The position numbers and the translations under genes were made by a program. A stretch of DNA of 63,320 nt, the filler included, from Octopus bimaculoides (taxonomy: Eukaryota), in NCBI RefSeq assembly GCF_001194135.2. It is 8 parts of 8 records of this genome, joined end to end, with 100 filler letters (N's around TTAATTAATTAA, not from the genome) between each part and the next. Parts side by side here need not be neighbours in the genome. Positions count along the whole stretch, not along the records: positions 23,859 to 37,966 come from NC_068993.1; 7 more parts are not named here. One strand, given 5' to 3'. Numbering within the stretch: the first letter of the stretch is position 1; each line of letters begins with the position of its first letter. Under the pieces are notes generated by a model. It was not told the origin of the DNA. It searched no databases and saw only the letters and a program-made list of their open reading frames with translations. Below are positions 24,612-34,223 of the stretch, piece by piece.

Positions 24612-24889
24612 TTTGCTTGCAGCGTTTTCTTTGATTTCATCCGCTTGGATATCCAATCCCAATCAGAACCACCCAAGCAAATTAACCAACCGCTACCTTA
24701 CCAACAAAATAGCTACACCTCTTTGACGGGGTTTTCTGAAAAGTTCGTTAAAATATTGCGTTTAGCCGAGAGACGAGCTTCAAGTTGTCTTTTATGTTCG
24801 TCATCTCAGATCATTCTTAGGCAGCTTCGGCATTTATTGGCCCAAACAATTAGAAACGCTTCTAGTGTTCTACCATTTGCCTCGTTAAG
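24612..24889 (-). pseudogene. Decayed paralog of exon c (copy 2)
   Basis: After tcatttaacag| the homologous frame reads LNEANGRTLEAFLIVWANKCRSCLRMI*DDEHKRQLEARLSAKRNILTNFSENPVKEV*, and another frame gives GLDIQADEIKE. These match KSCFRIV, NRPVKNL and LDLQGFDID of exon c. There is an in-frame TGA at 24806-24808, and the acceptor is out of phase (phase-1 splicing gives P-stop). Confidence 0.6.
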
Positions 24890-25121
24890 CTGTTAAATGA
24901 TCAGACAACAAAAATGATACATAATGCAAATGATCTAATTACGGTGATTTCGTCAATTGTACTGTAATTCTACTGATAGAATCAGATTGTTCTACCAATC
25001 AAGGCTTTCGGCCAAGAGTCGAAGGAGATGGCCAGTATAAGTGTCACTGTCAACTTCCTTTAGTCAGTTGCTAATTGCATGCTTTTTAGTAGATAACAAA
25101 AAAGAAAAGAAAAATACTTAC

Positions 25122-25205
25122 GGATATAGGTATCTAAAATTGGACGCACACCTAATTGCAGTTGAAAATGAATGCCAGTTGGAACTACTGTCATATTAAC
25201 ATATA
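25122..25205 (-). CDS. Cys-module copy 2, exon b' (84 nt, phase 1-1)
   Basis: tttgtcttttccag|TATAT...TATATCC|gtaagt. Encodes (L)YVNMTVVPTGIHFQLQLGVRPILDTYI; same length and phase as exon b, aligns without gaps. Confidence 0.72.
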
Positions 25206-25245
25206 CTGGAAAAGACAAATATATATAATCCTTTTATTTTATCAT

Positions 25246-25275
25246 TTATTATTATTATCATTATTATTATTATTA

Positions 25276-25369
<94 letters not shown>

Positions 25370-25417
25370 CATTATTATTACTATCATCATTATTATTATT
25401 ATTATCATTATTATTAA
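25246..25417. repeat. (ATT)n microsatellite
   Basis: Direct reading. It is the tail of a minus-strand element end at about 25450-25490. Many (TA)n, (CA)n, (GA)n, (GATA)n, (CAT)n and (TATG)n tracts occur throughout the window. Confidence 0.95.
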
Positions 25418-25675
25418 TTTTATTATAATCTGCTTTCAATTCTGTTTCAATTTCCTGCCGAGTGTCTTCCTGACACTTAGGGCAGAGAAACACACTGTAT
25501 GCATTGGTAGGCCATTAAATTAAACACACGAAATTGTCCATTTACAAAGTCATGTGATAGAGAAAAGTGGAAAAAAGAAAGAAAGAGAAAATAAAAAATA
25601 AAAAAAGGATGGCATATTGGGTTTCATATATTTTACCCCAGTGTCACTTTGATGGATTGCGCTGCTCTCTCATTC

Positions 25676-25721
<46 letters not shown>

Positions 25722-26058
25722 TATTCTTCGAAGCCGAAATGCTGATGTAGACCAAGCAACAACCTGTCAGTTGCTGAGAAGCTCAGGCCTAAAAAAAGAT
25801 ACTGATGGTTTCATGTTAAGGGCACGAGACCAAATCTTGGTTACCAAAAGCTACCTGGCTAACGTTCTTCCAAACGGTACTGACCCTAAATGCAGATTCT
25901 GCGATACATTTGACGAGACAATAGACCATCTCGTCTCGGGATGTCTTGTATTGACACCAAAGGAAGACAAAAATCGCCACAATAGGGTAGGACAGTATTT
26001 ACATTGGAAAATATGCAAACACTACAAAATCAACACTCCTGCTTACTGGTATGAACAT
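25722..26058 (+). mobile_element. R4/Dong-like RLE LINE fragment (CCHC region) starting directly after (TAA)n
   Basis: LRSSGLKKDTDGFMLRARDQILVTKSY..CRFCDTFDETIDHLVSGC..RHNRVGQYLHWKICKHY..WYEH; (TAA)n at about 25677-25720. Confidence 0.85.
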
Positions 26059-26315
26059 TTAAGCAGTTGCCTTCATCTATTGACAGCATCAATGTGAGGG
26101 ATGAGCGTGGCGCTAAATATTTCAAGCAGTTCATCTGGGTGAACCGGTCTTTCGTACGCCTACCTCCATTCGACCCCTTGGCTATCGTCGACTCCCTGTA
26201 AGTCCCTGCGCTCCCCTAGGAGTCCCTCGGACCCCTTTTGGCGAACCTTGGACTAAACAATATGTTCATGTTGGAACAGGACATAAAAACAGCAATTATT
26301 GCAAATAATACTTAC

Positions 26316-31786: not shown

Positions 31787-31870
31787 TGAGATATTTCTGT
31801 TTAAATGTGTAACCATTTCGCGACGCCTCTATAAACATTCCGTTTCCGATAACTGACAATTGAACGCATA
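31787..31870 (-). CDS. Cys-module gene, copy 1, exon b (84 nt, phase 1-1)
   Basis: aattttttttcag|TATGC...TATCTCA|gtgagt. Encodes (L)CVQLSVIGNGMFIEASRNGYTFKQKYL. Needed to avoid a T+GA stop if exon a spliced directly to exon c; same length as paralog 25122-25205. Confidence 0.78.
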
Positions 31871-31915
31871 CTGAAAAAAAATTAACGAAATTTGATTTAA
31901 TGAAATATATATATA

Positions 31916-32480
31916 CGAGGGATGTTCATTAAATATTTCTACTGACCCACTTTCCAAAGACTGAGATAAGCAAAACTTGACATAATTATAAGTCCTTCTC
32001 TGCATAGCCACCAATGGTGACAGACTTCTCCCAGTGTTGTGAAGACCTCGTCTGTAGAAGTTGCTAGGTTGTATCTGGAGCCAAGACTTTACCTCGGAAA
32101 TAAGTTCATCATTCTCTTAAAAATGTTTCCCCTTCAAAAAAGACTTCATGATTGAAAATAGGTGGGAGTCATATGGTGCGAGGTCGGGAGAGTAAGGGGG
32201 ATGAGGAAGGATTTCATGGCCGCAGGAGTGTGCTTTCATTTGGGCAACATACGCATTGTGAACTGAGGCGTTGTCTTGGAGTAGGCGGACTCCTTTGGTC
32301 AGAATGCCACCCTCTCTACTTTGATGGTATCCTGCAATTAATTGTGGTGCCCTTTGCCAGAAAATCCATCATCACTACTCCGCACTAGTCACAAAAAACT
32401 ATGAGCATCACCTTGCCTGCTGAGGGTTGGACACGAGCCTTCATTGGAGGTGGTGAATTATCATGCTTCCATTGCTTCGA
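31916..32480 (-). mobile_element. Mariner (DD34D) transposase 3' half with one terminus
   Basis: AGKVMLIVFCD, then LLQDNASVHNAY...LPHPPYSPDLAPYD with 34 residues between the two Asp; terminus TA-CGAGGGATGTTCA at 31914-31928. Confidence 0.88.
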
Positions 32481-32492
32481 CTAGACTTTAGG

Positions 32493-32606
32493 CTTGAGAA
32501 GTACATGGAATCTTGAGAAGTACATGGAATCTTGAGAAGTACATGGAATCTTGAGAAGTACATGGAATATTGAGAAGTACATGGAATCTTGAGAAGTACA
32601 TGGAAC
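32493..32606 (+). repeat. 19-bp tandem repeat x6 (CTTGAGAAGTACATGGAAT)
   Basis: Units start at 32493, 32512, 32531, 32550, 32569 (C>A) and 32588. Confidence 0.95.
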
Positions 32607-32790
32607 AACTAGGGGCTGCAATAAACGTGGAGCACTTGCAGAAAACAGCGCTGCTTGGAACCGCTCGAATACTCCGAAAGGTGCTCGAAAAATAAGGGGT
32701 GTTACCTTAGTTCACTGGTAATGAACAACTGACACCCTAGTACATCTCCAGCATTAGAAGCTGTGCAAGGACAATGATGATAATAATAAA
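32493..32790 (+). mobile_element. Very short 5'-truncated R4/Dong-like 3' end with a tandemly repeated 5' junction
   Basis: LEKYMEQLGAAINVEHLQKTALLGTARILRKVLEK*, then a 3' UTR and a TGA/TAA-rich tail; the first 19 nt occur six times. Confidence 0.8.
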
Positions 32791-33305
32791 ATAAATATTG
32801 AGATGGTTCGACTAAAAGTGGTGCCCCAGCATGGCGGTTGTGGAATGGCTGAAATAAATAAAAGGTGAAACGTAGAAGATATTATCTCACGTTAAACAGT
32901 TACTGCTGTTTACCGAATTGTTTCGAAATTACGTCGTTAGTTTCCTATGGGAAACAGATGCAGGAAATATGCTTTCAATGATAACTATCCCTGTGGTTAT
33001 GTATCATTATATTATATACTAAGCTGAAATAGTTTACAATAATTTCTTTTACTATACAAACATAAAAATCGTAATTATATTTAAGCAGGAAGTGAATGGC
33101 GAAAGGGAAATGTTAGCATTCAAGCAATTTTAAGAGGGATTTATTAAGGGTAGCGGTTAGGTTAAAATTGGGGTAGAACTGAGATGTGATATATTCTCCG
33201 AAACTTGAGTTCAGACTGTTTTCAAACTGCTCTTATGCTAACTGAATATATACACTGGTATGCGTATTTTTACGTGAATATATACGCACATGCATATATG
33301 CACAT

Positions 33306-33353
<48 letters not shown>

Positions 33354-34004
33354 GTAAGTATGTATGTGTTTATGCGTATATGTTTGTATGTATGTCTATA
33401 TATATATACATATAGGCCCGTCCTTTGGTACAAGGATGTATTGAAGCACTCACTAAAATATCTACGGCTTAATTTGACATCTTGCGAACGTTACTGGCGA
33501 TCTGCATGGCGTAAAATGTGTCATGATGCGTCAAAGCAATTTTAGCTGAACAAAAAGAACACTAACAGTACTATATCCTACAGGGAACAGAGACATTCTA
33601 CCAATCCCAAGCAAAATCAAAACCATCATTGTCTCCATTTTGAAATCATAATAAAACCCATAGCTGGCCTCAAATTACATTCACGCATCCATCGCCAACA
33701 GATAGAGCTTCTTTCATTTTTGAAGCAGATATTTCTTTTTTCTTCTTTATATGTGTGTATGTGTGAGTGTGTGTGTATTTAGCAGGAAACAAGGAAAGAT
33801 ACTGAAGGTTAAAGTTCAAAGGGTTTCGGCACGGTGGAGTAGAGTCAACTATGAGGTAGAAGATTGGAGCAGTTCTTAGTGTGTATTTGGCTCAAATAGA
33901 TATGTAAAATTCCTAGGATGACAAAGTTACAAGTGACAGAAACGAAAGGTGGATGTAAAACTTCAAATGTGTTTTGTTCAGAGAGAAGAAAAACCTATGC
34001 TTAC

Positions 34005-34223
34005 ATCTTTTGATATAATACAGATATGAACAACATTTTCCTATGTTACTTCTCCAAGAACAGCTCATTACTGCTCCGAGTTGCAAATCACCGTATTTGG
34101 ATTCTCCAGTGGTCAATTGGTTATTCTCAGTATCGATATCTGCCACGTTATTCTGGAAGATTCGATCAACCTGAATCTTCTCTATCTTTTTCTCCAAAAG
34201 TGCCTTCGCAGCAATATTCGTTT
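34005..34223 (-). CDS. Unannotated Cys-module gene, copy 1, exon a (219 nt, phase 1-1)
   Basis: tttattacatttacag|AAACG...AAAAGAT|gtaagc. Encodes (E)TNIAAKALLEKKIEKIQVDRIFQNNVADIDTENNQLTTGESKYGDLQLGAVMSCSWRSNIGKCCSYLYYIKR. Paralogous to 26316-26531. Confidence 0.8.

What the first reader, a model, noticed from the sequence alone, without database searches (positions are those of the whole stretch)
24612..34223. Tandemly duplicated three-exon, all-phase-1 Cys module: a probable unannotated gene family
Seen: six minus-strand exons in the order a-b-c, a'-b'-c' (219/84/273 nt and 216/84/about 278 nt). Five have canonical AG/GT sites and splice in frame at phase 1, and none is visible as a coherent ORF in the track. 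Exons a and a' are about 30% identical; b and b' have the same length. Keeping exon size, phase and open frame at this divergence argues for real coding exons. Inference: these are either two tandem paralogs or one repeat protein (c ends in G and a' starts AT, giving GAT in frame). Symmetric phase-1 exons are the usual architecture of shuffled extracellular modules.
Basis: partly seen in the sequence, partly recalled or inferred. Interest (0 to 1): 0.82.

Follow-up and report, generated by a model that had tools for sequence, protein, structure and literature searches.

The report
Annotated octopus secreted two-domain DUF4773 gene
Five of the six proposed exons are real and belong to one already-annotated Octopus bimaculoides gene for a secreted protein with two copies of a poorly understood domain (DUF4773); the sixth exon is not real, so this is a fairly ordinary, fast-evolving, uncharacterised gene rather than an undiscovered family.

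Summary
Exons a, b, c, a' and b' (minus strand) are real. All have AG/GT sites, all are phase 1, and they form one open frame. Spliced, they are 100% identical to RefSeq XP_014775008 (LOC106872505, Octopus bimaculoides), so the gene is annotated, as one two-module gene.

The sixth exon (c', 24889-24612) is not real. It has stops in every frame, its acceptor is absent in O. vulgaris, and it is not homologous to c. The true c' exists in O. vulgaris and O. sinensis (419-aa orthologs). In O. bimaculoides it most likely lies in a 2.8-kb assembly gap just past the piece's edge.

The gap at 26795-27791 is intronic. Its flanks are collinear with the gap-free O. vulgaris locus.

The gene sits between two single-module paralogs with the same exon plan (b always 84 nt). 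Just past the exon c donor lies an in-frame relic of the family's C-terminal tail and stop. This points to a fusion of tandem duplicates.

The family is found only in cephalopods here. Profile comparison links it to Pfam DUF4773. One paralog is reported in octopus skin mucus. dN/dS against O. vulgaris is about 1.1, yet the frame is intact. The predicted nine-strand beta core has no structural match. Function is unknown; a mucosal or host-defence role is a guess.

The parts
34005..34223 (-). Exon a (219 nt, phase 1-1). Encodes the acidic, helix-predicted N-region of module 1 plus the C-x-W...G-x-C-C motif (C1, C2).
   Evidence: AG/GT sites and a single open frame. 100% identical to XP_014775008.1 residues 33-105. 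Ortholog at L001 20309-20494, with an 11-codon in-frame deletion.
31787..31870 (-). Exon b (84 nt, phase 1-1). Encodes beta strands of the module 1 core.
   Evidence: The 84-nt length is the same in all six b exons examined across the two species and the paralogs.
30085..30357 (-). Exon c (273 nt, phase 1-1). Encodes the rest of the module 1 beta core (xCF and LGC cysteines, C3 and C4) and the linker.
   Evidence: Ortholog at L001 28885-29157.
30035..30084 (-). Relic of the ancestral terminal tail and stop, in frame directly after the exon c donor (G|GTAAG). It reads GKENQKENSLIWYKNA*. An (AAAT)n run containing AATAAA follows at about 30006-29968.
   Evidence: ORF 30035-30427. The same tail and TAG are present in O. 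vulgaris, 47/51 nt identical. It is homologous to the C-termini EENQSENPLVWKMNA* (P0004) and ESNQNENSLKWDHDA* (P0007).
26795..27791 (.). Assembly gap inside the c->a' intron, flanked by (AT)n.
   Evidence: The flanks are collinear with the gap-free O. vulgaris locus. The same gap persists in the chromosome assembly (L002 23945-24941).
26316..26531 (-). Exon a' (216 nt, phase 1-1). Encodes the module 2 N-region plus C1 and C2.
   Evidence: Ortholog at L001 35851-36042, with an 8-codon in-frame deletion.
25122..25205 (-). Exon b' (84 nt, phase 1-1). Encodes module 2 core strands.
   Evidence: Ortholog at L001 38549-38632.
25060..25121 (-). Read-through of the b' donor. The current RefSeq model XP_014775008.2 and UniProt A0A0L8H6E8 use it as their C-terminus (RKYFSFLFCYLLKSMQLATD*). 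It is probably a stop-gap ending, because the real c' is not in the assembly.
24612..24889 (-). It is not coding. RefSeq version 1 used its acceptor only to add Pro plus a stop.
   Evidence: Stops in all three frames. The acceptor is not conserved, homology to O. vulgaris ends here, and there is no similarity to the real c'.
32020..32440 (-). Decayed Tc1/mariner-type transposase remnant in the a->b intron. It is not part of the gene product.
   Evidence: Pfam DDE_3 E 1.2e-5, below the cut-off, and the frame is interrupted by stops.

Best explanation
The window holds the middle of one protein-coding gene, Octopus bimaculoides LOC106872505. Its product is a secreted protein made of two tandem modules of about 190 residues.

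Module layout (shown). Each module is encoded by three phase-1 exons (a, b, c). It consists of an acidic N-region predicted as a helix at low confidence, a basic core of about 99 residues bounded by four conserved cysteines (C-x-W...G-x-C ... x-C-F ... L-G-C), and an acidic tail. The core is predicted to be a nine-strand antiparallel beta meander. It is a very divergent Pfam DUF4773 domain.

Origin (shown plus inferred). The gene arose from two neighbouring single-module genes of a tandem cluster. A GT donor inside the ancestral last exon (G|GTAAG, 16 codons before the old stop) now splices in phase 1 to the phase-1 acceptor of the downstream copy's exon a. This skips that copy's signal-peptide exon, which has since been lost. 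The uniform phase 1 of all introns made the fusion frame-compatible.

Missing exons (shown plus inferred). The signal-peptide exon and the last exon (c') lie outside the piece. The signal-peptide exon is seen beyond an assembly gap. Exon c' is most likely hidden in the 2.8-kb gap immediately downstream.

Function (inferred only). It is probably a rapidly evolving component of epithelial or mucus secretions, possibly acting in host defence or microbe binding. The acidic N-region might mask the cationic beta core until secretion or processing.
For: Gene identity:
- 100% match to XP_014775008.1.
- 70%-identical 419-aa orthologs in O. vulgaris and O. sinensis carry a complete second module.
- The O. 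vulgaris exon map has the same phases, and its translation equals P0002.
- The locus is collinear from piece 37232 to 24891.

Secretion:
- Signal-peptide exon MMKLTIGGIIYLALMFHLGTGA... at L002 10001-10097 and L001 10001-10097.

One gene rather than two:
- No signal-peptide exon in the O. vulgaris c->a' intron, while the positive controls find all three such exons in the locus.
- Five protein models join c to a'.

Fusion origin:
- Relic tail, stop and AATAAA after the c donor in both species, homologous to paralog C-termini at protein and DNA level.
- Flanking single-module paralogs with exon sizes 91/216/84/335 and 94/201/84/173, all phase 1.

Domain:
- Cuttlefish-type relatives P0012, P0016 and P0026 pass the DUF4773 gathering score over exactly the C1..C4 core.
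- Octopod versus decapod profiles: hhalign probability 99.1%, E 1.4e-18.
- The octopod consensus and several paralogs hit DUF4773 in the same register at E 0.005-0.04.

Fold:
- AF2 core pLDDT about 90, nine strands. Module 2 shows the same strand pattern.

Constraint:
- P(no stop) under neutral divergence is 0.007. Both exon indels are in frame, and all 20 splice-site nucleotides are kept.

Function hints:
- A paralog (A0A0L8GLC6, N-terminus 28/31 identical to P0010) is detected in O. vulgaris skin mucus.
- DUF4773 transcripts sit next to lysozymes among the top transcripts in secreting locust pleuropodia, and one marks an oyster haemocyte cluster.
- The acidic N-region and basic core pattern holds across nearly all family members.
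Against: - No RNA evidence was available here for the c->a' junction. The retained stop and AATAAA after c would also allow a one-module isoform.
- The gene itself gives no Pfam hit at any threshold, so DUF4773 membership is transitive.
- dN/dS is 1.10 (CI 0.68-1.91), and the exons are no better conserved than their flanking introns (87.9% vs 87.5%). That is also what relaxed constraint would give.
- No transcript-derived (Logan) sequence falls in this protein's 90% cluster, whereas the neighbour gene has one.
- Exon c' of O. bimaculoides was not seen; it could be lost rather than hidden.
- The functional proposal rests on context and composition only.
- The AF2 alignment has only 17 sequences, and the fold has no match in the PDB.
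Confidence: 0.8

Rival explanations
1. Two separate tandem paralogous genes (a-b-c and a'-b'-c') that annotation pipelines have wrongly fused.
For: The stop codon and AATAAA of the ancestral gene end are retained right after exon c in both species. At least one other O. vulgaris model in this family (P0018) looks like an artefactual fusion of two neighbouring genes. No junction reads could be checked here.
Against: Module 2 has no signal-peptide or start exon in the gap-free O. vulgaris intron. The GGTAAG donor and phase compatibility are conserved in both species. Five protein models in three species use the same junction GYL|DVIAD. Unlike P0018, the fused product carries no signal-peptide remnant.
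Confidence: 0.1
2. A decaying or non-functional gene (pseudogene in progress) whose open frame is a leftover.
For: dN/dS is 1.10, and the exons are as diverged as the introns. All three O. bimaculoides models lack c'. No transcript-derived cluster member was found for this protein.
Against: The frame is intact over 873 nt in O. bimaculoides and over the full 419 codons in O. vulgaris and O. sinensis. The simulated chance of no stop is 0.007. Both indels are in frame and all splice sites are kept. The invariant Cys and Trp residues are retained. The module 2 core has dN/dS of about 0.3. The missing c' coincides with an assembly gap.
Confidence: 0.08
3. The exons are transposon-derived coding sequence.
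For: The profile search listed a Gigantopelta retrotransposon Pol (P0009, E 6e-10). The introns contain mariner and LINE remnants.
Against: P0009 is a six-fold RNase H repeat whose score is a sum of six weak stretches. The same protein 'hits' many unrelated Pfam families in that way. The TE remnants lie in introns, mostly on the other strand. The gene has orthologs at a syntenic single-copy locus.
Confidence: 0.01

Closest known systems
RefSeq LOC106872505 (XP_014775008.1/.2) of Octopus bimaculoides, with orthologs O. sinensis LOC115218660 (XP_029644447.1) and O. vulgaris CAI9731754.1
   Same: It is the same gene. The five confirmed exons give 100% identity to XP_014775008. The orthologs share exon order, phases and about 70% protein identity.
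   Different: The O. bimaculoides models lack the last exon c' and end artificially (P*, or read-through of b'). The O. vulgaris and O. sinensis models have it. All are labelled 'uncharacterized', with no domain assigned.
Pfam DUF4773 (PF15998), a domain of unknown function in secreted proteins of molluscs and insects; e.g. O. bimaculoides A0A0L8GLC6, found in skin mucus
   Same: The module's C1..C4 beta core aligns to profile positions 2-112 of 118. Cuttlefish relatives pass the gathering score, and the octopod family is linked to them at hhalign probability 99.1%. The proteins have a signal peptide and are small and Cys-containing.
   Different: This gene does not reach any Pfam threshold on its own. 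It carries two such domains in one chain, whereas the relatives seen here (apart from P0018, a probable annotation fusion) carry one. It also has the cephalopod-specific acidic N-region and ENQxEN..W tail.
Flanking single-module paralogs: LOC106872506 (XP_014775009.1, 183 aa) and the 241-aa upstream gene (O. vulgaris CAI9731753.1 / O. sinensis LOC115218395)
   Same: Same strand, the same signal-peptide/a/b/c exon plan with all introns in phase 1 and b = 84 nt, and the same conserved Cys/Trp pattern.
   Different: They have one module each and about 33% identity to module 1. They keep their own signal-peptide exon and terminal stop.
Classical 1-1 symmetric exon-shuffled extracellular modules (EGF, Ig, kringle etc.; from general knowledge)
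   Same: All introns are phase 1, the protein is extracellular, and duplication of a phase-symmetric unit kept the frame.
   Different: Here one domain is split over three exons rather than one exon per domain. The duplication is a fusion of whole neighbouring genes, not the insertion of a mobile module into unrelated proteins.

Membership tests
Pfam DUF4773 (PF15998) | The protein scores at or above the Pfam gathering threshold (27 bits). | tested here: not met
   The window-encoded modules, P0020, P0002 and P0022 give no DUF4773 hit even at E <= 10.
Pfam DUF4773 (PF15998) | Homology to bona fide members, shown by profile-profile comparison. | tested here: met
   The octopod alignment A6 (which includes this gene's modules) versus decapod proteins that pass the gathering score (P0012 37.3 bits, P0016 33.3, P0026 32.4) gives hhalign probability 99.1%, E 1.4e-18, over 213 columns.
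Pfam DUF4773 (PF15998) | The match lies in the same register as the domain (whole core, conserved cysteines). | tested here: met
   The octopod-only consensus hits at E 0.0093, residues 84-182 to profile 2-111. P0004, P0024 and P0005 hit at E 0.005-0.04 in the same register. C55, W57, C64, C134 and C152 are invariant in the octopod family.
Pfam DUF4773 (PF15998) | Secreted protein (N-terminal signal peptide). | tested here: inconclusive
   A typical hydrophobic leader exon is present at L002 10001-10097, outside the piece, and is conserved across paralogs. No signal-peptide predictor was available. One paralog was found in mucus.
Exon-shuffled 1-1 module | The exons bounding the unit are in the same phase (1-1). 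| tested here: met
   All five exons start and end in phase 1. The same holds in the orthologs and paralogs.
Exon-shuffled 1-1 module | One exon corresponds to one autonomous domain found in otherwise unrelated proteins. | tested here: not met
   The C1..C4 core spans the end of a, all of b and the first part of c. An exhaustive profile search finds the module only in this small family: 15 representatives, of which two (P0009, P0015) are judged spurious.
Transposon-encoded protein | Significant similarity to a transposase, RT or Pol domain. | tested here: not met
   No Pfam TE domain is found in the protein. The P0009 hit is a repeat-summation artefact.

The most novel reading that the evidence does not exclude
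The cephalopod branch of DUF4773 is a lineage-specific, tandemly expanding and positively selected family of secreted proteins with a previously unseen beta-meander fold. It would act in mucosal host defence or as a toxin. LOC106872505 would be a recently fused two-domain member that can also give a one-domain isoform by using the retained ancestral stop and poly(A) site.
Probability: 0.2. Interest if true: 0.45.

Novelty: new member of a known kind. Interest (0 to 1): 0.25.

Why it matters
The practical gain is annotation. All three O. bimaculoides models of this gene end artificially, because the last exon falls in an assembly gap. None of the family members whose source names were looked up here carries a domain name, although the family can be tied to DUF4773.

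Biologically it is a clean small example of gene fusion between tandem duplicates. Uniform intron phase made the fusion possible, and the ancestral stop codon is still visible next to the new splice donor.

It also adds a fast-evolving, cephalopod-restricted branch to a domain family whose function is unknown but which keeps turning up in secretory and immune contexts. It does not open a long-standing question.

Tried and rejected
- Pfam scans of the module, of both full-length orthologs and of the current RefSeq model gave no hit.
- Word-indexed homolog searches were nearly blind to the family: two hits, then one. Only the exhaustive profile search found it.
- Foldseek of the AF2 module against the PDB and BFVD gave nothing. 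The best E values were 0.036 and 0.006, with TM <= 0.33, and the hits were only generic beta-meander pieces such as propeller blades.
- A sequence profile against the PDB gave nothing.
- The two-module AF2 model had pTM 0.37, with module 2 at pLDDT about 45, so nothing can be said about domain packing.
- tblastn for c' in the piece and in the whole 36.7-kb chromosome locus found it absent from the sequenced bases.
- tblastn for the signal-peptide exon in the piece found it absent. It lies beyond the upstream gap.
- Literature searches by LOC, XP, UniProt and SRR identifiers gave no hits. Other family members are not in the mucus-proteome supplements.
- A tRNA scan for SINE heads found none.
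- The retrotransposon hit P0009 and the bacterial RCC1-like hit P0015 were rejected as repeat-summation artefacts. This was tested for P0009 and judged by analogy for P0015.
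Full report
**1. What is in the sequence**

On the minus strand there are five clean exons:
- a: 34223-34005 (219 nt)
- b: 31870-31787 (84 nt)
- c: 30357-30085 (273 nt)
- a': 26531-26316 (216 nt)
- b': 25205-25122 (84 nt)

Each follows a polypyrimidine tract and AG and is followed by GT(A/G)AG. Each is open in only one frame, the phase-1 frame. Joined, they give a single 291-codon reading frame. 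Exon a and a' peptides are 35% identical over 62 residues (E 8e-10 within the piece).

**2. The sixth exon is not real**

The stretch 24889-24612 does have an AG before it and a GT after it. Read in phase, it gives Pro then TAA, with nine stops in all. The other two frames have three and seven stops. It has no similarity to exon c or to the true c' of the ortholog. In O. vulgaris the AG is AT, and interspecies similarity fades exactly here.

**3. The gene is already annotated**

The spliced peptide is 100% identical over its full length to XP_014775008.1, 'uncharacterized protein LOC106872505 [Octopus bimaculoides]'. Two further models exist: XP_014775008.2 (344 aa) and UniProt A0A0L8H6E8 (228 aa). 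All of them splice c to a', so databases treat this as one gene with an internal repeat.

O. vulgaris CAI9731754.1 and O. sinensis XP_029644447.1 (both 419 aa, about 70% identical) are the orthologs. They carry a complete second module, including a real c' (GVLTKTLNISLGPAQLWLEISVKNNTSHYIKVCFFLKYK...LGCPSK...EENQFEKAFHFVRG*). That exon is 31% identical to exon c.

**4. The assembly gap and the piece edges**

I fetched the O. vulgaris locus (L001, gap-free) and the O. bimaculoides chromosome locus (L002).

The piece is collinear with L001 from 37232<->11555 down to 24891<->38861. The two flanks of the gap at 26795-27791 match L001 32697-32049 and 36256-35616, in order and orientation. No exon of the 419-aa protein lies in the corresponding 2.9 kb. 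The gap is therefore intronic and harmless.

L002 shows that the piece is bounded by two further assembly gaps:
- 3.4 kb of N between the signal-peptide exon (L002 10001-10097) and the piece's upper end.
- 2.8 kb of N starting one base beyond 23859 and ending 90 bp before the next gene.

Exon c' is absent from every sequenced base of L002. In O. vulgaris it lies 3.6 kb after b'. The simplest reading is that the O. bimaculoides c' sits in that gap. This also explains why the three O. bimaculoides models end in three makeshift ways.

**5. Family and gene structure**

In both species the gene is the middle one of three same-strand paralogs: a 241-aa single-module gene, this two-module gene, and a 183-aa single-module gene (LOC106872506).

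I rebuilt two of the neighbours exon by exon. Their exon sizes are 91/216/84/335 and 94/201/84/173, all with AG/GT sites, all in phase 1, and with b always 84 nt.

An exhaustive HMMER profile search of 1.84 billion cluster representatives found only 15 hits. Those looked up are from O. bimaculoides, O. sinensis, O. vulgaris and Argonauta hians, plus transcript contigs whose nearest relatives are from the cuttlefish Acanthosepion pharaonis.

Two of the 15 hits are artefacts of summing many weak repeats. One is a six-fold RNase H repeat from a snail retrotransposon. The other is a 3920-aa bacterial repeat protein.

**6. Origin by fusion**

Reading straight through the exon c donor (CTC G|GT AAG ...) gives GKENQKENSLIWYKNA*, followed by AATAAA motifs. 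O. vulgaris has GKENEKENSLIRHKNV* at the same place, with 47/51 nt identical.

This is the family's normal C-terminus: EENQSENPLVWKMNA* in the upstream neighbour, ESNQNENSLKWDHDA* in P0007 and EENQFEKAFHFVRG* in c'. Exon c was therefore once a terminal exon.

There is no signal-peptide exon between c and a' in O. vulgaris. The same search recovers all three genuine leader exons of the locus.

The two-module gene is thus best explained as a fusion of two tandem duplicates. A donor inside the old last exon now joins, in phase 1, the phase-1 acceptor of the next copy's exon a. The retained stop and poly(A) motif leave room for a one-module isoform. This could not be tested here.

**7. Domain identity**

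The gene itself has no Pfam hit. The link to a known domain is indirect:
- The cuttlefish-type relatives P0012, P0016 and P0026 pass the gathering score of DUF4773 (PF15998) over exactly the C1..C4 core (37.3, 33.3 and 32.4 bits against a threshold of 27).
- Octopus paralogs and an octopod-only consensus hit the same model in the same register at E 0.005-0.04.
- An octopod profile aligns to the decapod profile with hhalign probability 99.1%, E 1.4e-18.

I therefore file the module as a highly divergent DUF4773 domain. The membership is by transitive homology, not by threshold.

**8. Structure and composition**

AlphaFold2 with the 17-sequence family alignment gave these results:
- The core (residues about 50-160) has pLDDT of about 90 and forms nine antiparallel strands in a meander.
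- An N-terminal helix precedes it, at low confidence.
- The C-terminal tail is disordered.

The second module of the O. vulgaris protein shows the same strand pattern, but at low confidence. The relative orientation of the two modules is not defined. Foldseek finds nothing convincing in the PDB or BFVD.

In nearly all family members the N-region is acidic (net -3 to -23). The 98-104-residue core is basic (+1 to +25). C55, W57, C64, C134 and C152 are invariant in octopods.

**9. Evolutionary rate**

Against O. vulgaris (272 aligned codons), dS is 0.126, dN is 0.138 and dN/dS is 1.10 (bootstrap 95% interval 0.68-1.91). Exons are 87.9% identical and flanking introns 87.5%.

By region, module 1 has dN/dS of at least 1 (N-region: 17 non-synonymous against 1 synonymous change). 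The module 2 core has about 0.3, on small counts.

The frame is nevertheless under constraint:
- A neutral simulation at the observed divergence keeps the 873-nt frame open in only 0.7% of trials.
- The two exon indels are 33 and 24 nt, both in frame.
- All 20 splice-site nucleotides are conserved.

This combination is typical of fast-evolving secreted proteins. It does not by itself prove positive selection.

**10. Function**

Nothing is known directly. The hints are:
- A family member (A0A0L8GLC6, 'DUF4773 domain-containing protein', N-terminus 28/31 identical to P0010) is reported in the O. vulgaris skin-mucus proteome. It falls in senescent animals (PMC11431876).
- A DUF4773 transcript is among the most abundant in secreting locust pleuropodia, next to lysozymes (PMC6966819).
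- A DUF4773 gene marks an oyster haemocyte cluster (PMC12064177).

Taken with the signal peptide, the acidic-then-cationic layout, the tandem expansion and the fast evolution, my best guess is an epithelial or mucus secretion protein with a defence or microbe-binding role. I put the probability at roughly one in three.

**11. Verdict**

The gene is a divergent, two-domain member of a known but uncharacterised domain family. The fusion scar is a neat detail, and the annotation of the 3' end can be corrected. The finding is not highly surprising.

Noticed in passing
window 32020-32440 (-): Decayed Tc1/mariner-type transposase remnant (Pfam DDE_3, E 1.2e-5, below the cut-off, with internal stops) in the a->b intron. 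It lies in a block collinear with O. vulgaris, so it is an old insertion.
   Followed up: partly
window 25771-26097 (+): A 108-aa ORF with a weak zf-RVT match (E 0.0017). It is probably the C-terminal remnant of a non-LTR retrotransposon reverse transcriptase, in the a'->b' intron.
   Followed up: partly
window 34870-36511: This is the best-conserved block of the locus: 90% identity to O. vulgaris intron 1 over 1.64 kb, higher than the exons. The + strand frames read like a decayed LINE AP-endonuclease (ILAIQEHR, VYSPT, GDLNTH), but there is no Pfam hit. Why it is better conserved than the coding exons is unexplained.
   Followed up: partly
window 37524-37926 and 29330-29712: Two copies, in opposite orientation, of an interspersed repeat of about 400 bp (each about 80% identical to L001 25253-25677). 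Shorter SINE-like copies lie at 34420-34660, 28800-28980 and 24188-24351. ARAGORN finds no tRNA-like head.
   Followed up: partly
window ~32500-32620 (-): Tandem repeat of a 19-nt unit (TCCATGTACTTCTCAAGAT, about 6 copies) in the a->b intron, seen when reading the sequence.
   Followed up: no
L002 10363-13769 and 27878-30699 (O. bimaculoides CM046613.1): The piece is bounded on both sides by assembly gaps that persist in the chromosome-level assembly. The downstream gap most likely hides exon c', which would explain the three different artificial C-termini of the O. bimaculoides gene models.
   Followed up: yes
P0018 (O. vulgaris CAI9731747.1, 342 aa): Another 'two-module' model in the family. 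It keeps part of the second copy's signal peptide (…CAVVNIV…) and corresponds to two separate genes in O. sinensis (LOC115227066 and LOC115227065). It is probably an annotation fusion, unlike the gene studied here.
   Followed up: partly
L001 165-7082 and 49098-52618; L002 3712-8304 and 30790-33521: Single-module paralogs flank the gene in both species, on the same strand and with the same phase-1 exon plan. The downstream one (LOC106872506) has a transcript contig in a public run (SRR7158633), while the studied gene has none.
   Followed up: partly
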